IMG/VR virus record: IMGVR_UViG_3300042308_001511
Location: 280,084 to 344,083 of that record
Reading direction: 5' to 3' (one strand)
DNA length: 64,000 nucleotides
This document shows, one piece after another, positions 1,433 to 60,817 of this stretch (within the stretch, counting starts at the first letter, position 1; each line of letters starts with the position of its first letter). The position numbers and the translations under genes were made by a program. Below the pieces are notes generated by a model that was not told where the DNA came from, made no database searches, and worked only from the letters and a program-made list of their open reading frames with translations.

Positions 1433-2722
1433 TTAGTTTTTTATGGCTTTCAGTGATATTGTTTGTCTGTCCTTTGTTATGTTCAGAAAATAAGTCCCTG
1501 GTTGCAGCATCTGTGTATCGATTGAGATTGTGCCTCCGTCGAATACCTGGATTGTTTTCCCTTCGATGGTTGTAAATGTACCGTATGATCCAGGTGTCAA
1601 GCTAATCTCTATCCTATCGTTGAAAGGGTTCGGCCAGAACAACTCTTTAAGTTGTTGTTCACGTAAAGATAAGCTAGATGAGTCTTTTAGTCCTGTATTG
1701 TCCCACAAACACTTCACCGAGTCGAACTGGTAGACGTAGATAGTGTCTGTAGGCTGTACCGGTTTTGTGCCTTTGTTCTCCCATACGAGTGTTTTGATGT
1801 TGAACTGGTGGTTGTCCCAACAGGTTGTATCTGCAGGCCTGGTCGGTATTGCTCTTACAGAGTCCAGCCAGAAATATCCTGCGTACGGGTGGTACATCTG
1901 ACATACGGGAGTATTATCGTTACAATCAGATAGGAACTTACCAGATACTATAATACTATCGAGGTGAACGATTCCTGCGACCTGTGCTGCTGCGTAGTTA
2001 CAGATCTTATACTGAGTGTTGTCGTAGCTGATATAGTAGCCTGAGCAGTCTGTAAAGCCGAGTGCTACGTAGTTGGTGATTGGTCCTGGTTCTGTACCTG
2101 GTACAATCATTATAGGAACACCGGTTGGTTTGTATTCTTTGTTATTGGTTCCAACAACGGAACAACCGTTAGCGTCGGTGAATACGACGTATAGTTTAGG
2201 ATTGTATAGGTTCATAAAGCAACCACCTTGGTTTGGACCGTAGTATTGGGTGAATGTGTTGTCCCAGTTCTTTGTGTATACTTTATCAATCATAGCATAG
2301 TTAGCTTTATCGACTGAAAAGTAAATACAGGTTTGTTGGTTTTGAGGGTTCTGTGGATCTGGCATCTGTATAACATTGAAGGAAGTGACCTTCAGTGAGT
2401 CACAGTCTTTAGTGACAGCGATAGAGATGTTTATTAGTGTGTCCAACGAGAATTTGGCTAAGCCGTCATCTTTCTTCTTACCGAGTACCCAGTAGGTGCC
2501 TGGTACGAGTTCGCCTTTTGTTTTAAAGTTTGTGGCCAGTTCGGATCCCTGTATTGCAGCGTCTACGACTCTATAGATTGACCACTTTTTAATGTTTGTT
2601 CCTGTGGTGTCGACTGATACGGCACCATCATTGAAGTTTGGTCCAGTAGCGTTTGTGACCTTTACTTGTGAGTTTGCTAGGAATGCTAGCATAAATGAGA
2701 TTGTAGCTATTAGTTTTTTCAT
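1433..2722 (-). CDS. secreted protein with type IX secretion (Por) C-terminal sorting domain
   Basis: N-terminal signal peptide MKKLIATISFMLAFLANSQ; C-terminus WPNPF...TTIEGK...IDTQMLQPGTYFLNI...LKAIKN fits type-A T9SS CTD pattern. Confidence 0.8.
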   Translation of the reverse strand: MKKLIATISFMLAFLANSQVKVTNATGPNFNDGAVSVDTTGTNIKKWSIYRVVDAAIQGSELATNFKTKGELVPGTYWVLGKKKDDGLAKFSLDTLINISIAVTKDCDSLKVTSFNVIQMPDPQNPQNQQTCIYFSVDKANYAMIDKVYTKNWDNTFTQYYGPNQGGCFMNLYNPKLYVVFTDANGCSVVGTNNKEYKPTGVPIMIVPGTEPGPITNYVALGFTDCSGYYISYDNTQYKICNYAAAQVAGIVHLDSIIVSGKFLSDCNDNTPVCQMYHPYAGYFWLDSVRAIPTRPADTTCWDNHQFNIKTLVWENKGTKPVQPTDTIYVYQFDSVKCLWDNTGLKDSSSLSLREQQLKELFWPNPFNDRIEISLTPGSYGTFTTIEGKTIQVFDGGTISIDTQMLQPGTYFLNITKDRQTISLKAIKN

Positions 2723-27085: not shown

Positions 27086-28258
27086 ATGGCAACATTTACC
27101 ACATCAAAAACTTCTGGAAGTATATATGTATCTGTTAATACAACAACGGGTTATTGGATGAGTTTCCATAATGGAAGTTATAATGGAAATTCAAACACCC
27201 CACAGATATATAGTGATTCTGGTACCTTCAATTATTGGGGTAAAAGATTGGATGTAATTGCAACAAATGGTGAATTTACAATTGTCGCGTGTGATGTTAA
27301 TGGAAACATTGGTGGTGATATAACTTTGTTGAATTTATATTCTAGTTCTGATATAATTGCGTTTGACGGAACTGGTTTGACCGCTTTGACTAAATTGAGT
27401 ATAGAGGGTGCATCGAATATTAGAGGTCAGCTAACATCTTTTGATGCGACTGGTATGACTTCATTGAATTGGTTATACTTAAGGAGTAATTTACTAACAA
27501 ATATAAACGTAACTGGTTTAGTAAATCTAACTAAGTTAGTGTTGGATGGTAATCAATTAACTTGGGGAGGTATAAGTGGTTTAAATACTTTGAGTAGTTT
27601 AACTTGGTTAAACTTAAATGGTAACTTATTAACTACATTTGATGGTTCAGGTTTGAGCTCGTTATTACAACTTGATTTGTTCTACAATCAGGTAACAACA
27701 TCTGGAATAACTAATTTACCAAATACATTGGTTAAATTGAATTTACGTTATAATAGACTTACATCATTTGATGCTACTAGTTTAGTAAACTTAACTGAAC
27801 TTAGTTTACAGATGAATCAAATAACATCTGTAAATTTATCTGGCCTAACAAAATTGATTTTACTTAATTTATCTGATAATTTATTGACAGATATAAATGT
27901 TTCTGGATTGACTAGTTTGAAATATATAAATCTTACTGGTAATCGTTTATCTACAATGGATGTAAGTGGTCTAACTAATTTAGTTGATTTGAGATTATGG
28001 CGTAATTCGTCTATAACACCTAGTGTTAACAATCAGATATTACAACAATTGGATCAAAATGGTGCTATTGGTGATACTTCTACTAGTAAGGGTTACTTTC
28101 CAGCAAATGGTGTTTTTTGGTCTAATAATGGTAGAACTTCTGTTAGTAATGTAAGTTTCAATAATTTGACGAATAAAAATTGGGAATTTGATGGTTTGGA
28201 TTTGATTGCGAGTCCAACTCGTCAGTTATCGGGCACTAAGGACAGAAAAAACTTATAA
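27086..28258 (+). CDS. leucine-rich repeat protein (internalin-like)
   Basis: About 10 repeats LxLxxNxLTxxDxSGLTxL; TAATATATA at 27055-27063. Confidence 0.9.
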   Translation: MATFTTSKTSGSIYVSVNTTTGYWMSFHNGSYNGNSNTPQIYSDSGTFNYWGKRLDVIATNGEFTIVACDVNGNIGGDITLLNLYSSSDIIAFDGTGLTALTKLSIEGASNIRGQLTSFDATGMTSLNWLYLRSNLLTNINVTGLVNLTKLVLDGNQLTWGGISGLNTLSSLTWLNLNGNLLTTFDGSGLSSLLQLDLFYNQVTTSGITNLPNTLVKLNLRYNRLTSFDATSLVNLTELSLQMNQITSVNLSGLTKLILLNLSDNLLTDINVSGLTSLKYINLTGNRLSTMDVSGLTNLVDLRLWRNSSITPSVNNQILQQLDQNGAIGDTSTSKGYFPANGVFWSNNGRTSVSNVSFNNLTNKNWEFDGLDLIASPTRQLSGTKDRKNL

Positions 28259-34798: not shown

Positions 34799-35017
34799 TT
34801 ATATTTCTATTATTTTATCAATCTTCATATCCCTTATATCCTCTTTTTCGACGTAGTAGATAATGGCGGTATACCTGTAACCGAGAGTACCTGCCGATGC
34901 GGAGTGTTCCGTTTTGATCACCTGTCTGATGTCAATGGTTTCCAGGAATTTGTTTAAATCACTCTCTAAATAGCCAGTGTACTCGCTGGAGAATATTTTT
35001 ATTTTTGCGTTTATCAT
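34799..35017 (-). CDS. small protein with C-tag variant
   Basis: Ends RDMKIDKIIEI. Confidence 0.8.
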   Translation of the reverse strand: MINAKIKIFSSEYTGYLESDLNKFLETIDIRQVIKTEHSASAGTLGYRYTAIIYYVEKEDIRDMKIDKIIEI

Positions 35018-35415
35018 AGTATGTCTTTTAGTCTGTGATCCCTTATCTCTTCGGTCGGGTTTTCATTTAGTCTTATTATACTTTCGTCTAAACGATTTTT
35101 CATATGTTCCATTTTAGACATCTCGTCACAGATTTCTTTTAGTATGAGTATGAAATCCTCCTCCATTGCCTCAGTGATGTCGTTTGGTGAAATGGTTATG
35201 TATTTACCCCACCCGACAAACTCCCACATTCCTTCGATAAACGAAGTACCTAACATATATGGAGTAATCTTCACAAAGTAATCGATGTCCTTTATTATTC
35301 GGAATTCAATCTTATCCTCTCCGTATTTCATGAAACTTATACGTTGGATACTTTCCTTTCCGAAGACTTTCTCAAGTATCTCTTGCATACGTTCGACGGT
35401 TATACGTTTTTCCAT
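35014..35415 (-). CDS. hypothetical protein with C-tag variant
   Basis: Ends RDHRLKDIL. Confidence 0.8.
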   Translation of the reverse strand: MEKRITVERMQEILEKVFGKESIQRISFMKYGEDKIEFRIIKDIDYFVKITPYMLGTSFIEGMWEFVGWGKYITISPNDITEAMEEDFILILKEICDEMSKMEHMKNRLDESIIRLNENPTEEIRDHRLKDIL

Positions 35416-35439
35416 ATTACGAATATAAGGATAGTTTTT

Positions 35440-35733
35440 TTAGATTCCAATAGAACTAAGCTTGTGATTACGTAATAACGTCTCCAACGAACTTGTTTGG
35501 TGTTTAAAGACTACCTTCTCCCAGTATTCGAGTCCCATTTTGGTATCACGCATCGTGAAAGATGACCAGATGAACCAGTTCAGATATGTGTAGTCGTCAG
35601 AAAGTATTTTCTCAGTTCTTACAACCACGTCTTTGTGAAGGTCGACCTCTTTTAGCCATTCATCTTGTACGTCTTTTGGTAGTGTTTCAAGCCATTCACG
35701 TCCCAAAAATCGAAATGTGTAATTCATTGTCAT
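35440..35733 (-). CDS. small protein with C-tag
   Basis: Ends RNHKLSSIGI; related to 46545..46787. Confidence 0.8.
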   Translation of the reverse strand: MTMNYTFRFLGREWLETLPKDVQDEWLKEVDLHKDVVVRTEKILSDDYTYLNWFIWSSFTMRDTKMGLEYWEKVVFKHQTSSLETLLRNHKLSSIGI

Positions 35734-35740
35734 ACTTTTA

Positions 35741-36286
35741 CTATAAACCGAGCTCTTCTATACGTTTGTTCCTTGTGTAGGATCTCATAAGTGGCTGTGG
35801 ATCCATACTGAACATATACTCGCCGAGGTCGTCGGGTATCAGGCAGTCGTATTCCTTCTCGATGTTCATTATGACCTCTACCATATCTAAGTCGTCAACG
35901 TTCATCTCGTTGAACGTCTTGGCGCTGTAGTTCCATTCGAAATCGTAGTCTAGGTGTTCGCGTATCATGTCGTTGAAGGTCTTCGGAAACAGCAACGTAA
36001 CTAATTGTTCTATCGTCTTTATCGTCATTTTTTCCAGTATTTCGTTTATTCTTTTCTCCCTGTGCATCGACTTGTTCCGCGCTTCGTCTGGAATGAAGTC
36101 TTTCGTCCAGTAGCTCGCTACCCTTCCTACTCTTTGTGAGTTTGTCCAGTGCTTAGGTTTTTTCGGATAGCTTATTACCCTTCCTTGGAATGTTCCATCT
36201 GGATCCGCGGTATTGCAGCTTGTTGAAATTACCTCCACGACGAACTCTGGTTCTACTTTGGCAATCCATCTCTCTCCTGTTTTCAT
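35741..36286 (-). CDS. apparent fusion: SH3-like module plus ACP-like domain lacking the Ser, two tags
   Basis: Internal REKRINEILE; C-half MNVDDLDMVEVIMNIEKEYDCLIPDD matches ACP helix II; ends RNKRIEELGL. Confidence 0.75.
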   Translation of the reverse strand: MKTGERWIAKVEPEFVVEVISTSCNTADPDGTFQGRVISYPKKPKHWTNSQRVGRVASYWTKDFIPDEARNKSMHREKRINEILEKMTIKTIEQLVTLLFPKTFNDMIREHLDYDFEWNYSAKTFNEMNVDDLDMVEVIMNIEKEYDCLIPDDLGEYMFSMDPQPLMRSYTRNKRIEELGL

Positions 36287-36420
36287 ATCCCTATACCGTT
36301 TAGTGTTACATGGTTGTACGTTCACGTGATTATCTTCTCAATAGAATAATTATCACGATGATTATTAATAATGTCATAATTTTATTTTTTTTTATGTCTT
36401 ACGAATATAGCAAAAATAAA

Positions 36421-36819
36421 TCAGTGTGTGTAATAGTTAAAGTAATAATTCATTTTGCCGAACATACCACCTTCCATCTCGGCGAACACATAGAACCTAA
36501 GTTTTGTAATTTCGTATTTAAGAACCTCACTTGCAATCTCTCTGATGAACTGTCGTGTATCGAATGCGTCATTCAAATAAGAACTCGCGTTACGCGTGTG
36601 TTTAATCTGTTGTTTATAAGGTAACGAGTATCGGTCGGTCTTCACTGACGCATGTGTGTTTATCATATCAAGCATCTTTATGACCTTTTCTTCTATTGAC
36701 TTTTCGAGATTACACATTTGCTTCTCATACTCTTCAAGAGTTAGTTCCTTTCTATCTTTTCCAGACATTAGACCCAATAGAGTATTGTTACTTTCCGGTA
36801 TCGCTCTTAATTTCATCAA
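36421..36819 (-). CDS. hypothetical protein
   Basis: 132-aa ORF. Confidence 0.75.
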   Translation of the reverse strand: MMKLRAIPESNNTLLGLMSGKDRKELTLEEYEKQMCNLEKSIEEKVIKMLDMINTHASVKTDRYSLPYKQQIKHTRNASSYLNDAFDTRQFIREIASEVLKYEITKLRFYVFAEMEGGMFGKMNYYFNYYTH

Positions 36820-37199
36820 TCTATAAATCTCAATTTGTATTCTCTTATTTCTGATTGATTTGCGGGTTCGGGCATTTCATTTCCAGATGAATCGACGAGA
36901 ACTGATAAGTCAATGTATTTATCACCTGTCAATTTTATCAATTGCTCAATAATCTTATTTGATGAGGATTGATCTTCCATTGCATCGTATATATCCTGTC
37001 CGATTTCTTTTAGAGGTAATAGGTTATGTTTAACAAAGTGATTTTTTATATCATGATTATCGAGTGATAGAGCAACAAGTATGTATTTCTCTAAATCGCT
37101 TAGTTTTCCTATAACATCGGTCATATCACCCGCGTTTAGGTATTTATAGGTCTCTATGAATTCATTCGATACCTCTAATTTTTCTTTAGTTTCTTCCAT
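36816..37199 (-). CDS. hypothetical protein
   Basis: 127 aa; ends IREYKLRFID (weak tag). Confidence 0.75.
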   Translation of the reverse strand: MEETKEKLEVSNEFIETYKYLNAGDMTDVIGKLSDLEKYILVALSLDNHDIKNHFVKHNLLPLKEIGQDIYDAMEDQSSSNKIIEQLIKLTGDKYIDLSVLVDSSGNEMPEPANQSEIREYKLRFID

Positions 37200-37205
37200 A
37201 GTTTA

Positions 37206-37520
37206 TCAATTTTTGTAAATCCATTTGTCTTCTTCGTCAAAGTAGTAGTTCTTTGTTTCTTCTGAGTTTTCAGACCTAATCTCACAATAAACCTCATTCT
37301 CTTGACAGATTTCCTCACATAGTAATGTGTCGATGTCCTCGATGTCGTCAGTGTCTAAGTTCAAAGAGATTGATAACATTTCCTCGTCTTCATCATAGTC
37401 TGTATCGACTTCTGCTTCAGCTTCAGGGTAATCACTTTGAAACCGATTAGTTATGTTATTTACTATTGTGTCGAAGTCTGAATCGGCATCAATAAAAATG
37501 TAGAATTTTGTGGTTATCAT
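37206..37520 (-). CDS. highly acidic hypothetical protein
   Basis: MITTKF..., D/E-rich. Confidence 0.7.
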   Translation of the reverse strand: MITTKFYIFIDADSDFDTIVNNITNRFQSDYPEAEAEVDTDYDEDEEMLSISLNLDTDDIEDIDTLLCEEICQENEVYCEIRSENSEETKNYYFDEEDKWIYKN

Positions 37521-50241: not shown

Positions 50242-51663
50242 TTAGTATCCGAACCTTGCTTTTTGTGCGTTGTAGTTCTGTAGTATCTCTGAATCGGTGA
50301 GTATCCTTTTGTAAATCTTTAGATTGGATATCTTTCCGTTGAATGGGTATATGCCAGTTGGTCCATAGTTAGCCATTTTTAATCCACCACCTTGGAAAAC
50401 AGAATCTACGGTTCCTGCAGCGGTAGTCAAATTTGTAACAAGTGTACCATTTATGTACATTTTTGCAGTAGATGTTGTTGCTATATCGTCTTGTACCAAT
50501 GTACACACCACGTTGTACCAGGTATTGTCCGAATATGAAATTGGTGAAATTATGGTTCTCTGTTGTGGCACTCCTGCTGCTACGGTAGCAGAGGTTGTGT
50601 ACCACGAGAATAATATTTTATTTAGGTTGGTACTATCTCTGAATGATAGATATGGAAGTAAGTTATTTGAGAAAATCATATTAAACTGGTTTATACTAGA
50701 TGTTCTATTGAACCAAACGTCCCATGTCATTTCGTAGTTTTGTGTGAAAATTGTTGAGGTTGATGCAGAACTTCCTGCAGCACCGTCAAACTTCAAAGTA
50801 CGTGATATATCTGGAGTATAAGACGCACCACTAATTGGAAGAGTTCCGTAGTTTTTTGCCATATCGGTCCATCCGGTTGTAGTATTTATAAATGACCTAG
50901 TATCATTTGCATCTATATAAAAGTTAAGACCTTCTCCAACTATATCATTTTCAAATCTGGTATTTTGTGCATTGTAGTTTTGTAGTATCTCTTCTGCAGT
51001 CAGTGCTTTATTATAAAATCTCGTTTGAGAGAATAATCCTTGCCATGGGTAGTTGTTATCTGTTGCTGCTGTATAACCACCTGCCACTCTGGATACGGTG
51101 AGTTGTGTTGTTGTTGGATTAACCGTTGTTGTTCCAGTTACGTTCGATATATATTTTCCGTTTAGATAAAATTGAATGGTTCTATCTGTTTTTACTACCA
51201 TTGATAATAAACCCCAATTTTTCGACAAATCATAGTTACTAACCGTTGCACCGTAGAAATAGTTGCCACCGGTCTGTCTGAAACTAAATTTCCATTGGCT
51301 TGGTGTACTGACACATGATATCATAACCCATGGCCATGTTGCACCTGGACCACAAAGTGAATTTAGTGAAGTCGTGTTTTCTCTCATTTTGACGGTGAAT
51401 TCCATAGTGTACTCTGACTGGTCTACAAAAACGATGTTATTGGTTGTGGATATCCATGTAGGTGTTCCCACAGTTGCTCCTTTGGTGTCGAAACAACCTA
51501 ACCCCACCGGATTATAACCGATAGTTCCGACTAAAAGTCCAGAATTCCTTCCAGTTAAATCTTTGTAATCAACACCAGTACTAGGGTATGATTTGGTGTT
51601 GGCAGGATCGAGGTAGTATATCAATCCGTCAGTTACTATGCTAGGTCCTATGTTTGTTGCCAT
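50242..51663 (-). CDS. tandem two-domain LamG-like protein
   Basis: Two DGL..Y.D.A....S / F.Y...LT..EILQNYNA units; second unit resembles 49519..50226. Confidence 0.85.
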   Translation of the reverse strand: MATNIGPSIVTDGLIYYLDPANTKSYPSTGVDYKDLTGRNSGLLVGTIGYNPVGLGCFDTKGATVGTPTWISTTNNIVFVDQSEYTMEFTVKMRENTTSLNSLCGPGATWPWVMISCVSTPSQWKFSFRQTGGNYFYGATVSNYDLSKNWGLLSMVVKTDRTIQFYLNGKYISNVTGTTTVNPTTTQLTVSRVAGGYTAATDNNYPWQGLFSQTRFYNKALTAEEILQNYNAQNTRFENDIVGEGLNFYIDANDTRSFINTTTGWTDMAKNYGTLPISGASYTPDISRTLKFDGAAGSSASTSTIFTQNYEMTWDVWFNRTSSINQFNMIFSNNLLPYLSFRDSTNLNKILFSWYTTSATVAAGVPQQRTIISPISYSDNTWYNVVCTLVQDDIATTSTAKMYINGTLVTNLTTAAGTVDSVFQGGGLKMANYGPTGIYPFNGKISNLKIYKRILTDSEILQNYNAQKARFGY

Positions 51664-56238: not shown

Positions 56239-57105
56239 ATGCGAGTTATATGTGTAAAAATAGGGTCTCTTTCTGAGTTTGAGACGTTCCTTCTTGCCGA
56301 AAATTTGGGATTGGATTACTTATCTATGAATGAGATAAGAAGAGATAAGACTGTTAGGAAATATTGGTTTGACCTGAATGGTGGAAGACTTTTGGCAGTA
56401 GAAAGGGTTATACTGGGTGAAAAAGAGTTTGACCCTATGATGCCTTTAGATTCATTACAATTAGATTCAATTCGTAAAAGTAAGCCTGTTCAGGCAGGTG
56501 AACCAACTAGGAAGTTTAAAGGTGACATAGAAGAGAAGAGGAAAGATTTTCAGCGATTGTTGGAAGAGGAAAGGAAATACAAAGAGGATATGTTGAACCG
56601 TAAGGACTATAATCCTGGTAACATAGTTTGTATAAATTCTAAATCTACATTGGATCAGGTTTTCGCGGTTTGTGTTGTAAATGATGTGGATCCAGTTACG
56701 ACAATTTCTTTTATATACGGTAATAGTCACTTAGATATGACACGTGTTTGGTTTGAAAAAATAACCGGTGTTTTGGTTGCATATAGTTACTACGAATATG
56801 GTAGAGATAACTTTGTTATGGTTGATTGTTTGATACCTAAAAAAGCGATATATCAGATGAGTCACACTCCTGTTAATGTACCGAAATTGAAGGTTTCTGA
56901 TGTTGCAATAGATGCGTATGGTAAGTTGAAAGAGTTAGGAATAGACTTAGGTATACAAAAGTTAGAGAACGTCGTTCTGGTTCAAAAGAACAGAGAGTTT
57001 TTGGAAAAATTACAGAGTGAACTTGCAGATGCAATCGATACTGAAGATTATGAGAAGGCTGCAGTTCTTAGAGATAGAATAAATGCACTAAAGGATAGAG
57101 ATTAA
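56239..57105 (+). CDS. protein with C-terminal UVR (UvrB/UvrC) motif
   Basis: LEKLQSELADAIDTEDYEKAAVLRDRINAL. Confidence 0.75.
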   Translation: MRVICVKIGSLSEFETFLLAENLGLDYLSMNEIRRDKTVRKYWFDLNGGRLLAVERVILGEKEFDPMMPLDSLQLDSIRKSKPVQAGEPTRKFKGDIEEKRKDFQRLLEEERKYKEDMLNRKDYNPGNIVCINSKSTLDQVFAVCVVNDVDPVTTISFIYGNSHLDMTRVWFEKITGVLVAYSYYEYGRDNFVMVDCLIPKKAIYQMSHTPVNVPKLKVSDVAIDAYGKLKELGIDLGIQKLENVVLVQKNREFLEKLQSELADAIDTEDYEKAAVLRDRINALKDRD

Positions 57106-57404
57106 ATTCCTAAATCTCTTAGTTTTTTTTCTCTCTTCATTGCTGATATAAGTGAATTTGGTTGTATACTGAGTACCTTATCTACTACGAAATCAGAGAT
57201 TGTTAATTTATATTTCGTCTCTACTTCAATAATAGCGCCTATTACATCCAGTTCATCCATATCCATATCGTAGAAAGTATTTGCGTTCGGATCCCACTTT
57301 ATACTACAAAGGTTCTCACATATTTCGTCAAATGGTATTTGCATATCACATATAACAGATATAAGAGTTTCTAAGTTTGTAATAAGTTTCTTTGAGTCCA
57401 TCAC
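57102..57404 (-). CDS. acyl-carrier-protein-like, Ser replaced by Glu, with C-tag
   Basis: DMDMDELDVIGAIIEVETKYKLTISD aligns to ACP DSLDxVELxMxxEExFxxxIxD; ends REKKLRDLGI. Confidence 0.65.
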   Translation of the reverse strand: MMDSKKLITNLETLISVICDMQIPFDEICENLCSIKWDPNANTFYDMDMDELDVIGAIIEVETKYKLTISDFVVDKVLSIQPNSLISAMKREKKLRDLGI

Positions 57405-57409
57405 ATTTG

Positions 57410-57712
57410 TTATTTTAATATTTCACCGAGTATAGATTCTCTTAATTCTTCTTTTGTGTAGAACGGAAATGTGTAGTTGGTGTCATCAAATTCGAAAGTC
57501 CAGGTTGCATCGCCTCCACTATCATCTTTTATTCTTATACTACGATTGGATTTGAATATTATAATGTATTGTTTTCCTTTTGTTAGTAATCGATTTTCAT
57601 CTTTTTCATCTGGAACCCATTTTCCGTTTTCTGAATATTTAAGTTGATACGCATCTCTTTTTGCCACACATTTACCACCGGTAACGAACTCGTCTTTTTG
57701 TTCTTGTGTCAT
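57410..57712 (-). CDS. family-B protein with C-tag variant
   Basis: KCVA...LTKGKQY...RESILGEILK. Confidence 0.8.
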   Translation of the reverse strand: MTQEQKDEFVTGGKCVAKRDAYQLKYSENGKWVPDEKDENRLLTKGKQYIIIFKSNRSIRIKDDSGGDATWTFEFDDTNYTFPFYTKEELRESILGEILK

Positions 57713-59086: not shown

Positions 59087-60817
59087 TTAGAGTTGAGTTA
59101 CATTGAATCCGTATAGAGACCATCCCTTGCTTATAAGGTTCGTTAATGCAGTGTCACTTGCATGAGTTCTCAAAAGGTCATTTGTACTGTATTTAGTTCT
59201 AGTAAGTGAGCCGTTTACAACACCACTTGCGTCTAATCCTGTCAATAATGAATCGACTTCTGTAGGAGTTACTGAAGTTAGTCTATAAATATCTACGTCT
59301 TTAGCACTATAAGGTAGATTAAACGAAGTTATATCTAATTGTTTCAATTCTATAGTAAAAAGCTCTCCAAATGAAGCTAAGTCAATGTATGGCCAATTTA
59401 TATTCACTAAGTAAAGTCTTTCGAGTGAGTTCCATAGGTTAGTATTGCTATGGAATGTTGATATTGTTGTATCGAATATTGATGGGGTTATATCAAGTTG
59501 TGACATATCCTTCAGACTTAAATCTGTTAGTGATGTTAGATTTAAAAGATTAATCGCAGATACACCAACATTTTCAAGAAACAATCGTTTTAGGTTGTTT
59601 GGTAATTGCATAATACTTGAAGAATAATTGGGTGAATCCAATATAATAATTGTATCCAAATAAGGAAGTTGTAAATCGGTACTAACTAATGCTGCATTAT
59701 TTCTCAAATCGATATTGTCTAAGTTTTCACAACCAGTACTATTTATATTAGTCAAATTTGTACAATTGCTTAATTGTAACATTGTTACACCATCGTGGCC
59801 ACCTAAGTCTAAAGATGTAATAGGTAAGTTTGTGATATTCAGTAATTTAGTTACATAATGTGGAGAGTTCCATTCTGACCTGTTGCTTGTTATAGTTCCA
59901 TCTAATTTTATGAAAGATGGTTGTTGCCAATTAGGTATATTAGTCAATGACATTACTCCTGTGAACGATTGTAGGTTCTCAAGTGTTATATGCTCAATGT
60001 TAGTTAATAATGAGAAATTTAAATCAGAAGTTGTAATTACTGTATTGTTTTTTATTGTAAGGTATTTCAATTGAGTTACCTTATCTAGTGAGAATTCTAA
60101 GTATTTGTTGTTGGTTAGTTCTATACTAGATATATATCCTGGCATCATTCCAGTATTAACGTTTCCATTAACGTCACAGCTCCATATTTTTATCAATTTT
60201 GGTCCATATGAATTCATAGTTCCATCAGGAACCGACGTATTTGTCTTTTGGAAGGTTGTCCATGATGGTAGTATTTCTGAAGTTCCGTCCCAATATAATA
60301 TACGATAATATCCTTCTGATGATCCGATTCTACCATCTATTATATCGCCAGTTAAAAGTTGTGCTTTCAGGATAAATGCATTTGGTGGTGCAACCAATTG
60401 TTGTTCAACAACTCTACGTAGTGTACATGATTTACCACCTACTTGTATTGCAAAACTTGCAGTTCCTGATGTTGATGGAGTTCCTGATATTGTATATGTT
60501 AATGTACCACTACTTAGTAAAAAGAAACCTGATTGTAGTTTTGCATTAAGACCAGTAACACCAGTTGAATTTACCGTTTGTGTTGGGTATGAACCTCCAT
60601 TACCACCAGCATATGAAACCGATGATGATGCACTTACCGGTTTAAGTGCTACTAATGTACCGTAGTTGGTAAAAGATCCACAATTTAGAGATTGTATAGT
60701 TCCGTCCCAGTCATCTACAATAGATGTTCTAGGCCAATTGTTTGGATTTTTGTATGGTTTGATACCTGCAATGAGATTTCCCCACATATTGTACCATTTA
60801 CTTCTGTCGATAGGCAT
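59087..60817 (-). CDS. LRR protein with Ig-like N-terminal module; related to 27086..28258
   Basis: Degenerate LRRs; shares [AS]CDVNGN and C-cap (LD..G...RT..S.....NL..K.W...G) with 27086 protein. Confidence 0.8.
   Translation of the reverse strand: MPIDRSKWYNMWGNLIAGIKPYKNPNNWPRTSIVDDWDGTIQSLNCGSFTNYGTLVALKPVSASSSVSYAGGNGGSYPTQTVNSTGVTGLNAKLQSGFFLLSSGTLTYTISGTPSTSGTASFAIQVGGKSCTLRRVVEQQLVAPPNAFILKAQLLTGDIIDGRIGSSEGYYRILYWDGTSEILPSWTTFQKTNTSVPDGTMNSYGPKLIKIWSCDVNGNVNTGMMPGYISSIELTNNKYLEFSLDKVTQLKYLTIKNNTVITTSDLNFSLLTNIEHITLENLQSFTGVMSLTNIPNWQQPSFIKLDGTITSNRSEWNSPHYVTKLLNITNLPITSLDLGGHDGVTMLQLSNCTNLTNINSTGCENLDNIDLRNNAALVSTDLQLPYLDTIIILDSPNYSSSIMQLPNNLKRLFLENVGVSAINLLNLTSLTDLSLKDMSQLDITPSIFDTTISTFHSNTNLWNSLERLYLVNINWPYIDLASFGELFTIELKQLDITSFNLPYSAKDVDIYRLTSVTPTEVDSLLTGLDASGVVNGSLTRTKYSTNDLLRTHASDTALTNLISKGWSLYGFNVTQL

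What the first reader, a model, noticed from the sequence alone, without database searches (positions are those of the whole stretch)
35741..36028. Second Ser-less ACP-like domain (DSL to DDL), fused to an upstream gene across an A6 run
Seen: MTIKTIEQ...FNEMNVDDLDMVEVIMNIEKEYDCLIPDDLGE...RNKRIEELGL is a closer ACP match, again with an acidic residue at the Ser site. Two divergent copies with different acidic substitutions (D here, E at 57102) argue for selection rather than decay (inference). The junction reads REKRINEILE-GAA AAA ATG. One A fewer would give GAA AAA TGA with the usual ATGA coupling, so the fusion may be a 1-nt slip or an assembly error.
Basis: partly seen in the sequence, partly recalled or inferred. 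Interest (0 to 1): 0.68.

Follow-up and report, generated by a model that had tools for sequence, protein, structure and literature searches.

The report
Serine-less phage ACP-like gene, frameshift-fused
A huge freshwater phage encodes a small acidic protein with the acyl-carrier-protein fold whose cofactor-bearing serine is permanently replaced by aspartate, so it probably works by binding partners rather than carrying acyl groups; its fusion to the gene upstream comes from one extra A found only in this strain.

Summary
On the minus strand, 35741-36028 encodes a 95-aa acidic ACP-like protein (pI 4.3) with DDLD where ACPs have DSLD. It is read in frame with the upstream 86-aa gene across GAAAAAATG.

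The ACP likeness rests on sequence (PDB ACPs E about 1e-4, PHROG 5934 E 3e-8). A confident AF2 model also has ACPs as its best structural matches, though with modest Z of 5-5.7.

The serine loss is old and selected:
- DDLD is invariant in 19 relatives, and dN/dS is about 0.1-0.5.
- The paralogue clade (57102) switches between DELD and DDLD.
- Among the top 150 hits of a profile search there are about 89 Ser-less single-domain relatives.
- Kuttervirus "acyl carrier proteins" also carry DDLD.

The record holds no PPTase, no canonical ACP and no ketosynthase (only sub-threshold PlsC and LYR traces).

The fusion is derived. Seven related contigs keep the ATGA overlap of two separate genes (six with A5, one with GAACAATGA). 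The 181-aa protein is the only fused member among the 15 listed of its 31-member cluster. A6 reappears in an independent assembly of the probable source run, so it is probably a real strain-specific +1 indel.

Inferred function: an obligate apo-ACP mimic or adaptor acting through the conserved helix-II surface.

Also noticed: its C-terminus carries a tail motif (R-E-x-K-L-x-E-L-G-I-stop) shared by about 80 ORFs of this phage.

The parts
35741..36028 (-). ACP-like coding part (95 aa plus stop). It is a separate gene in all relatives examined. pI 4.26.
   Evidence: PHROG 5934 E 2.8e-8. PDB ACPs E about 1e-4. AF2 pLDDT 91.7. Top structural matches are ACPs. 18 stand-alone 95-aa homologues. pI.
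35885..35896 (-). D45-D46-L47-D48, the counterpart of the ACP D-S-L-D motif. Asp46 (35891-35893) replaces the phosphopantetheine-bearing Ser, at the N-terminus of helix II.
   Evidence: Alignment to AcpP. Invariant in 20 sequences. In the model, helix 46-60 starts here.
35744..35773 (-). C-terminal tail motif RNKRIEELGL. It forms the end of the last helix and is shared with about 60 other ORFs of the genome.
   Evidence: The regex hits 60 times in six frames, all within 3 aa of a stop.
36028..36033 (-). A6 run (T6 on the + strand) that joins the two reading frames. Six relatives have A5, giving GAAAAATGA; a seventh has GAACAATGA.
   Evidence: DNA alignment A3. L017. Contigs of X1 have A6; X5 has one letter fewer at 36028.
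36029..36286 (-). Upstream gene part (86 aa, pI 9.4): a small beta-barrel (SH3/Tudor/PWWP-like) plus a C-terminal helix, of unknown function. It is a separate 85-89-aa protein in relatives.
   Evidence: Homologues and alignment. AF2 pLDDT 68.5. Weak Foldseek matches. pI.
36029..36061 (-). Tail motif of the upstream protein (REKRINEILEK, second flavour). It is made internal by the extra A.
   Evidence: Flavour-2 regex: 14 of 20 hits lie within 4 aa of a stop, and this one is internal only because of A6. In relatives it ends the protein.
57102..57404 (-). Paralogous Ser-less ACP-like gene (DELD). It carries the same tail (REKKLRDLGI).
   Evidence: E 3.8e-10 to the first copy. 13 relatives found, 11 of them aligned, with DELD or DDLD.

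Best explanation
SHOWN.
- The window is the last 64 kb of a 344-kb freshwater virus record related to the Bacteroidetes-infecting 'Mahaphage' huge phages.
- 35741-36028 (-) encodes a 95-aa acidic protein with the ACP fold. The Ser that would carry 4'-phosphopantetheine is Asp.
- No Ser or Thr stands in its place, and the 344-kb record encodes no PPTase, no canonical ACP and no ketosynthase (PlsC and LYR give only sub-threshold traces).
- The residues of ACP helix II and loop that contact partner enzymes are conserved (phage D45, L47, D48, E57, Y60, I64 and D66, matching AcpP D35, L37, D38, E47, F50, I54 and D56).
- The gene is under purifying selection and belongs to a large Ser-less family, mostly D or E at the site.

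INFERRED.
- The protein cannot shuttle acyl groups.
- It most likely acts purely by protein-protein binding through the ACP recognition surface, as an obligate apo-ACP mimic. It would occupy ACP-binding host enzymes (lipid or lipid A synthesis, or other ACP partners) during takeover, or tether such a partner.
- The carboxylate may stand in for the phosphodiester of holo-ACP.

The fusion.
- One extra A in a homopolymer (A6 instead of A5) removes the TGA of the upstream 86-aa gene, and the ATG of the ACP-like gene becomes in frame.
- The result is an exact concatenation of 86 + 95 aa.
- This is a recent, strain-specific +1 indel in a pair of genes that are normally joined by an ATGA overlap. It is not an evolved domain fusion.
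- The ACP-like protein can probably still be started at its own ATG, because one related lineage keeps only the last 30 nt or so of the upstream gene in front of it.
For: Fold and homology.

Ser-site conservation:
- DDLD invariant in A1; DELD/DDLD in the paralogue clade.
- Family-wide, among hits P0043-P0187 of at most 135 aa: D 45, E 29, other 15, against 30 with Ser.

dN/dS is 0.11-0.52 and pI is 4.26.

Nothing over a family cut-off in the 344-kb record for PPTase, canonical ACP, ketosynthase, PlsC or LYR. PlsC and LYR gave only sub-threshold traces.

Literature:
[quoted passage not shown] 1995).
- AcpP D35 and D38 are critical for partner binding (PMC13343975).

Fusion:
- A6 versus A5 in six contigs. 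The ATGA overlap is kept with GAACAATGA in L017.
- Separate 85-87-aa and 95-aa genes are called in L003, L004, L005, L008, L009 and L017.
- The fused 181-aa protein is the only fused member listed of a 31-member cluster.
- X1 has A6 at depth 16, while the bridging contig of X5 has one letter fewer.
- L006 lacks the upstream gene but keeps its 3' remnant and the ACP-like gene.
Against: - Function is inferred only. No partner has been identified.
- Structural Z-scores are modest (5-5.7), in the range where helical bundles can match by chance. Pfam PP-binding is below its threshold.
- The site is not strictly acidic in the wider family: A, G, T, H, N, V and Y also occur. This weakens the idea that the carboxylate mimics the phosphate.
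- The record may be only part of the genome, since a syntenic relative lies on a 660-kb contig. Absence of a PPTase or of ACP-dependent enzymes is therefore weak evidence.
- Only contigs, not raw reads, could be laid. A systematic read error at the homopolymer is not excluded.
Confidence: 0.6

Rival explanations
1. The Ser-less ACP-like protein is a structural or adaptor subunit of a phage complex, in the way mitochondrial ACP is a subunit of complex I and of LYR-protein complexes. It would not be a decoy aimed at host enzymes. The shared C-terminal tail would dock it, like dozens of other small proteins, onto a common phage or host receptor.
For: - The tail motif is shared by about 80 ORFs and is almost always C-terminal.
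- Among family representatives, the tail is present in 60 of 89 Ser-less proteins and in 0 of 30 Ser-containing ones.
- The acidic ACP-like protein (pI 4.3) is translationally coupled to a basic neighbour (pI 9.4).
Against: - No LYR-type protein scores over the cut-off.
- The upstream partner gene is missing in the L006/L007 lineage.
- No receptor for the tail has been identified.
- Kuttervirus DDLD proteins lack the tail.
Confidence: 0.3
2. The A6 run, and with it the fusion, is a sequencing or assembly artefact. The real phage has A5 and two separate genes.
For: - All seven related contigs have separate genes.
- The fused protein is unique among the listed members of its cluster.
- The X2 contigs break at the run and X3 has no cover there.
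- No raw reads were available.
Against: - Logan's independent assembly of the probable source run gives the same A6 at word depth 16, with no difference over 2.4 kb.
- The exact 181-aa protein is on three or four contigs from JGI, NCBI and Logan.
- One X2 contig end also reads CAT-T5-CCAGT, which is T6, but only 5 letters lie beyond the run, so it does not count as bridging.
- Neighbouring genes have the same lengths as in relatives (97, 133, 72 and 310 aa), so the assembly is not generally noisy with indels.
Confidence: 0.2
3. The junction is a functional device: either an evolved two-domain protein, or a programmed -1 slippery site (A-run next to a stop codon) that makes both fused and separate products.
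For: - A -1 slip of tRNA-Lys on GAA-AAA-TGA in the A5 form would give exactly the fused protein encoded here (reading of the sequence).
- The junction DNA is highly conserved.
Against: - L017 has GAACAATGA. The run is broken while the ATGA overlap is kept.
- L006 and L007 have no upstream gene at all.
- The conservation of the junction is explained by the two overlapping coding ends.
- No fused relative was seen.
- The fusion buries a tail motif that is otherwise almost always C-terminal.
Confidence: 0.05
4. The gene is a decaying remnant of a captured host ACP, or it is still a carrier protein modified at another residue.
For: Pfam PP-binding is below its cut-off and the Ser is absent.
Against: - dN/dS is 0.11-0.52 and the frame is intact in all relatives.
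- 373 family representatives score at E <= 1e-3.
- There is no Ser or Thr in the helix-II N-cap.
- The record has no PPTase.
Confidence: 0.04

Closest known systems
Bacterial acyl carrier protein AcpP (PF00550; for example PDB 1L0H, 1L0I, 2N57)
   Same: - Small acidic helical bundle.
- The helix-II motif D-x-L-D...E...M...E..[FY]D..IPD aligns residue for residue.
- ACPs are the best structural matches.
   Different: - Ser36 is Asp, so no 4'-phosphopantetheine can be attached.
- The N-terminal helix is split in two.
- The last helix is longer and ends in the phage tail motif.
- It scores below Pfam's gathering score.
Obligate apo-ACP mutants (E. coli apo-ACP; Synechococcus S39A)
   Same: The fold is kept, there is no prosthetic group, and the recognition helix is intact. 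Such proteins inhibit growth and sn-glycerol-3-phosphate acyltransferase (PMC4736557 and Keating 1995 cited there).
   Different: Those are laboratory constructs or a transient precursor. This is a naturally fixed, selected state, with an acidic residue rather than Ala or Thr. Its activity has not been tested.
Annotated 'acyl carrier protein' of Kuttervirus / Vi01-like phages (phrog_4154; for example Salmonella phage SP1 ASZ77662.1)
   Same: It also reads G-D-D-L-D-M-I-E-L-V-M, that is Asp at the Ser site. It is a phage protein of about 100 aa. 137 Salmonella and Escherichia phage records match this stretch.
   Different: - The similarity is only weak (E 4.7e-5 to phrog_4154).
- It has no C-terminal tail motif.
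- The host phylum is different.
- The papers read list it as ACP without noting the missing Ser.
Phage ACPs that keep the Ser (Prochlorococcus phage P-HM2 PHM2_029; Xanthomonas phage XbC2_157)
   Same: They are phage-encoded and match PHROG 5934.
   Different: They have DSLD. They are presumably true carriers. They have no tail motif.
Mitochondrial ACP (NDUFAB1/ACPM) as a structural subunit
   Same: This is an ACP used as a binding module in complexes. Such chains appear among the sequence and fold matches.
   Different: Mitochondrial ACP keeps the Ser, and by general knowledge its acyl-phosphopantetheine arm is part of the interface. No LYR partner scores over the cut-off here.
ACP-like ORF of the 634.8-kb huge phage LR745206.1 (Mahaphage clade, Al-Shayeb et al. 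2020, PMC7162821)
   Same: It has DDLD at the site, is 49% identical over residues 45-89, and lies at a similar place near the start of the record. That genome also uses the tail motifs.
   Different: It is 109 aa, carries the tail of the second flavour (...RILNEILKDVS), and has a different upstream gene. The record is unannotated.

Membership tests
Acyl carrier protein / PP-binding (PF00550) | Score over Pfam's gathering threshold | tested here: not met
   14.7 bits for the domain alone against a cut-off of 20.8; 13 bits in the genome scan.
Acyl carrier protein / PP-binding (PF00550) | Conserved Ser of the D-S-L motif, at the N-terminus of helix II, that carries 4'-phosphopantetheine | tested here: not met
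   Asp46 aligns with Ser36. D is invariant in 20 sequences. The paralogue clade has E or D.
Acyl carrier protein / PP-binding (PF00550) | ACP-type helical bundle fold | tested here: met
   AF2 pLDDT 91.7. The 50 rows Foldseek lists are all ACP or carrier proteins, with probability up to 0.98. The top five of 48,161 chains are ACPs, at Z 5.1-5.7, which is modest.
Acyl carrier protein / PP-binding (PF00550) | Acidic recognition surface of helix II and the following loop | tested here: met
   The counterparts of D35, L37, D38, E47, F50(Y), I54 and D56 are invariant in both paralogue clades. pI is 4.26.
Acyl carrier protein / PP-binding (PF00550) | Conversion to the holo form by a PPTase, and acyl carriage | not testable with these tools
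   The 344-kb record has no PPTase. Confirmation needs mass spectrometry of the expressed protein.
PHROG 5934, phage 'acyl carrier protein' | Significant match to the family profile | tested here: met
   E 2.8e-8 for this domain and 1.9e-6 for the paralogue. The family also takes Ser-containing phage ACPs.
phrog_4154, Kuttervirus-type DDLD ACP-like | Full-length match to the profile | tested here: inconclusive
   E 4.7e-5 over residues 36-67 only. SP1 matches at E 1.7e-56 over its full length. The DDLD motif is shared.
Programmed ribosomal frameshift site | Slippery run conserved among relatives | tested here: not met
   L017 reads GAACAATGA. L006 and L007 lack the upstream ORF.
Evolved gene fusion (two-domain protein) | Fused architecture present in independent relatives | tested here: not met
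   Seven related contigs have separate or single genes. The only fused member among the 15 listed of the 31-member cluster is the window's own.

The most novel reading that the evidence does not exclude
The Ser-less, tail-bearing ACP-likes would be a distinct and widespread family of phage effectors: natural obligate apo-ACP mimics that shut down or redirect host ACP-dependent pathways. They would be one cargo class of a clade-wide C-terminal tag system (R-E-x-K-L-x-E-L-G-I-COOH and its ...K-I-x-x-I-L variant). That tag marks about 40% of the genes in this 64-kb block and recurs in the published 635-kb Mahaphage, perhaps for a shared receptor involved in sorting, packaging, chaperoning or timed turnover.
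Probability: 0.25. Interest if true: 0.8.

Novelty: new variant of a known kind. Interest (0 to 1): 0.5.

Why it matters
Phage "acyl carrier proteins" are routinely annotated as auxiliary metabolic genes. This one cannot carry an acyl group, and the same holds for a large family that includes the annotated ACPs of the well-studied Kuttervirus phages. The annotation therefore suggests the wrong biology.

A fixed, selected apo-ACP mimic would be a simple way for a phage to interfere with host lipid or envelope synthesis, or with other ACP-dependent partners. It would also be a ready-made probe for ACP-binding surfaces.

The fusion itself matters only as a caution. It is a one-base strain variant, or possibly an error, and not a domain architecture.

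The tail motif seen in passing may be the more important lead. A short C-terminal tag shared by dozens of unrelated small proteins in huge Bacteroidota phages has, as far as my searches went, not been described.

Tried and rejected
- megablast of 35000-37500 and tblastn of the whole 194-aa ORF against the phage collection gave no match at the default limits. Only at E <= 10 did the domain find LR745206 and annotated phage ACPs.
- The search for related loci in viral contigs confirmed no relative.
- Pfam and PHROGs on the upstream half gave nothing. Its fold search gave only weak SH3/Tudor/PWWP-like rows on a model of pLDDT 68.
- Complex prediction of the upstream protein with the ACP-like protein returned 'no answer' (score 0.00). 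This is evidence neither for nor against binding.
- The gene upstream of paralogue 2 (57410-57712) is not similar to the upstream protein here. A duplicated two-gene module is therefore not supported.
- A programmed frameshift at the A-run was considered and rejected.
- A DNA-level reading of the tail motif (promoter, ribosome-binding site or recombination box) was rejected. Arg, Leu, Gly and Ile codons vary synonymously and the motif is tied to the reading frame and the stop codon.
- Paper searches for a described Ser-less phage ACP, or for the tail motif, found nothing relevant. A 2026 paper notes duplicated ACP genes in freshwater Flavobacterium jumbophages without comment on the Ser (PMC13573597).
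- Raw reads were not on offer. All runs were held as contigs, so allele frequencies at the run could not be measured.
- No other genetic code was used.

Full report
**Where it lies.**
- The window is bases 280084-344083 of a 344,083-bp linear IMG/VR virus record. The sample is lake water, and near-identical sequence occurs in lake, river and other freshwater metagenomes from 11 studies.
- The window is packed with small ORFs, mostly on the minus strand, and has no tRNA.
- One ORF carries a type IX secretion sorting domain, which points to a Bacteroidota host.
- The nearest published relative of the gene is in LR745206.1, one of the 634-735-kb curated 'Mahaphage' genomes predicted to infect Bacteroidetes.
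- A syntenic relative lies on a 660,742-bp JGI contig. Its gene order of 86, 95, 97, 133, 72 and 310 aa matches the window's 181, 97, 133, 72 and 310 aa. The 344-kb record may therefore be only part of a larger genome.

**The observation.**
- The junction is CTG GAA AAA ATG ACG, with six A's at 36028-36033.
- The C-terminal 95 residues align with solved ACPs over helix II and the following loop. DDLD stands where they have DSLD (E 1e-4 to 1e-3).
- PHROG 5934 'acyl carrier protein' matches at 2.8e-8. Pfam PP-binding stays under its cut-off.
- With an alignment of 20 relatives, AlphaFold2 gives a confident model (pLDDT 91.7) with helices 6-13, 18-25, 46-60, 66-74 and 78-92. Asp46 is the first residue of the long helix, as Ser36 is in AcpP.
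- All 50 rows that Foldseek lists are ACPs or carrier domains (probability up to 0.98, E 0.03).
- An exhaustive alignment to 48,161 chains puts five ACPs on top (Z 5.1-5.7, 67-74 residues aligned, rmsd 3.2-4.4). These Z values are modest for a helical bundle. The fold call rests on sequence and structure together.

**Is the missing serine decay or design?**
- The word search found 18 stand-alone 95-aa relatives (68-92% identity) and one fragment. D45-D46-L47-D48 is invariant in all of them.
- Pairwise dN/dS among six loci is 0.11-0.30, with one pair at 0.52.
- The paralogue at 57102-57404 (29% identity, E 3.8e-10) has relatives of its own. These read DELD or DDLD, and none reads Ser.
- Across both clades, the counterparts of AcpP D35, L37, D38, E47, F50, I54 and D56 are invariant.
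- A profile of both clades was run against 1.84 billion representatives, because the claim turns on how wide the family is. It found 373 proteins at E <= 1e-3.
- Among the listed single-domain hits, 45 have D, 29 have E and 15 have another residue (A, G, T, H, N, V, Y) at the site. Thirty, mostly the weakest hits, have Ser.
- So the Ser-less state is old, widespread and selected. An acidic residue is preferred but not obligatory.
- Among cultured phages, the annotated ACP of Salmonella phage SP1 (Kuttervirus, phrog_4154) reads GDDLD. Those of Prochlorococcus phage P-HM2 and Xanthomonas phage XbC2 keep DSLD.
- Two Vi01-like phage papers list the protein as ACP without comment.

**What it probably does.**
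- The record has no PPTase, no canonical ACP and no ketosynthase. PlsC-type acyltransferase and LYR protein give only sub-threshold traces. There is one hexapeptide-repeat transferase far away.
- With no Ser or Thr at the site, the protein cannot be a carrier. What is conserved is the surface by which ACPs dock on their partners (for D35 and D38, see PMC13343975).
- Apo-ACP and an obligate apo mutant are known to suppress growth. [quoted passage not shown] 1995).
- I therefore take the protein to be a natural apo-ACP mimic that binds ACP partners, either as a decoy against host enzymes (preferred) or as an adaptor subunit. This step is inference. No partner was identified.

**The fusion.**
- In relatives the upstream half is a separate 85-89-aa protein. 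It starts at MKTGERW and ends ...INEILEK.
- In L003, L004, L005, L008, L009 and L017 the two genes overlap by four bases.
- Aligned DNA shows GAAAAATGA in six contigs against GAAAAAATG in the window.
- L017 reads GAACAATGA, so the overlap is conserved but the A-run is not.
- L006 and L007 have lost the upstream gene except for its last 30 nt or so, and keep the ACP-like gene. The two proteins are thus not obligate partners, and the ACP-like gene can presumably start on its own.
- The exact 181-aa fusion is in the protein collection on three or four contigs (JGI, NCBI, Logan). It is the only fused member among the 15 listed members of its 31-member cluster; the others are 86, 95 or 98 aa.
- Logan contigs were laid on 34800-37200:
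  - The probable source run X1 bridges the run with no difference, at depth 16.
  - X5, from another study and about 98.5% identical, bridges it with one letter fewer at 36028.
  - The contigs of X2 end and begin at the run without bridging it.
  - X3 does not cover it.
- The extra A is therefore most likely a real, recent +1 indel of this strain. An error in the reads cannot be excluded without raw reads.
- The fusion makes internal a tail motif that is otherwise almost always C-terminal. This again marks the fusion as the derived, probably slightly defective state.
- The upstream protein is basic (pI 9.4) and modelled as a small beta-barrel with a C-terminal helix (pLDDT 68.5).
- A complex prediction with the ACP-like protein gave no verdict.

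**Seen in passing: a C-terminal tail.**
- The ACP-like protein ends RNKRIEELGL.
- The pattern R-[EDNQ]-x-[KRQ]-[LI]-x-x-[LI]-G-[ILV] occurs 60 times in the six-frame translation of the genome. All 60 lie within three residues of a stop, against 0 hits in reversed sequences.
- A second flavour (...[KRQ]-[LI]-x-x-[LI]-L-x) occurs 20 times, 14 of them at a C-terminus.
- In a rough gene set, 54 of 135 genes in the window carry a tail. The median length of tail-bearing proteins across the genome is 98 aa.
- Codons vary synonymously, so selection acts on the peptide.
- The motif recurs in related contigs and in the first 50 kb of LR745206.
- Among family representatives, 60 of 89 Ser-less ACP-likes carry the ...LG[ILV] tail and none of 30 Ser-containing ones do.
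- I found no description of the motif. Its receptor and purpose are unknown.

**Verdict.**
- The gene is a new variant of a known kind: an ACP-fold protein fixed in a serine-less state.
- The fusion is a one-base strain variant.
- Interest is moderate for the finding itself and higher for the tail system it belongs to.

Noticed in passing
Whole genome; in the window for example 35744-35773, 57102-57134 and 35440-35470 (all minus strand), with most instances between window positions about 6400 and 58700: A C-terminal tail motif R-[ED]-x-[KR]-[LI]-x-E-[LI]-G-[ILV]-stop. There are 60 strict matches, all within 3 aa of a stop. A second flavour, ...K-I-x-x-I-L-x, has 14 of 20 matches at a C-terminus. 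About 40% of the genes in the window carry a tail. Codons vary synonymously. The motif also occurs in related contigs and in Mahaphage LR745206. Its purpose is unknown.
   Followed up: partly
Window as a whole; L005 (660,742-bp JGI contig, 15.4-23.7 kb); LR745206.1 13-16 kb: The 344-kb record, which CheckV rates 91% complete, is syntenic with the start of a 660-kb contig and related to a 634.8-kb curated huge phage. It may be about half of a much larger genome.
   Followed up: partly
window 1433-2722 (-): A 429-aa ORF with a type IX secretion C-terminal sorting domain (Por_Secre_tail, E 3e-7). This hints at a Bacteroidota host.
   Followed up: no
window 27086-28258 (+), 59087-60817 (-), 50242-51663 (-): Two leucine-rich-repeat proteins and a Laminin_G_3 / concanavalin-like lectin protein, possibly for host surface or adsorption functions.
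   Followed up: no
window 56239-57105 (+), converging on the second ACP-like gene: A 288-aa ORF ending in a UvrB/UvrC (UVR) motif, E 9e-10. Its stop overlaps the end of the paralogous ACP-like gene on the other strand.
   Followed up: no
L006 661-1848 (NCBI metagenome contig SXGQ01179483.1): A related phage contig carries an EF-Tu-like gene (GTP_EFTU with domains 2 and 3) and a LOG/lysine-decarboxylase-like gene a few kb upstream of its ACP-like gene.
   Followed up: no
genome 177482-177580 (outside the window): A hexapeptide-repeat transferase ORF (179-aa open frame, E 5.5e-10). It is the only acyl/acetyl-transferase-like gene found in the record, and it is not linked to the ACP-like genes.
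   Followed up: no
window 36028-36038, run X2: Two Logan contigs of an independent lake sample end and begin exactly at the homopolymer, overlapping by only 11 nt. This could reflect low depth or a mixed A5/A6 population.
   Followed up: no
P0158 (NCBI KAG0036670.1, partial, labelled as from a fungus): A 122-aa protein otherwise very like canonical AcpP (C-terminal ...DEDAEKITTVQNAIDY) reads DDLD at the Ser site. It may be a contaminant or another natural Ser-to-Asp ACP.
   Followed up: no
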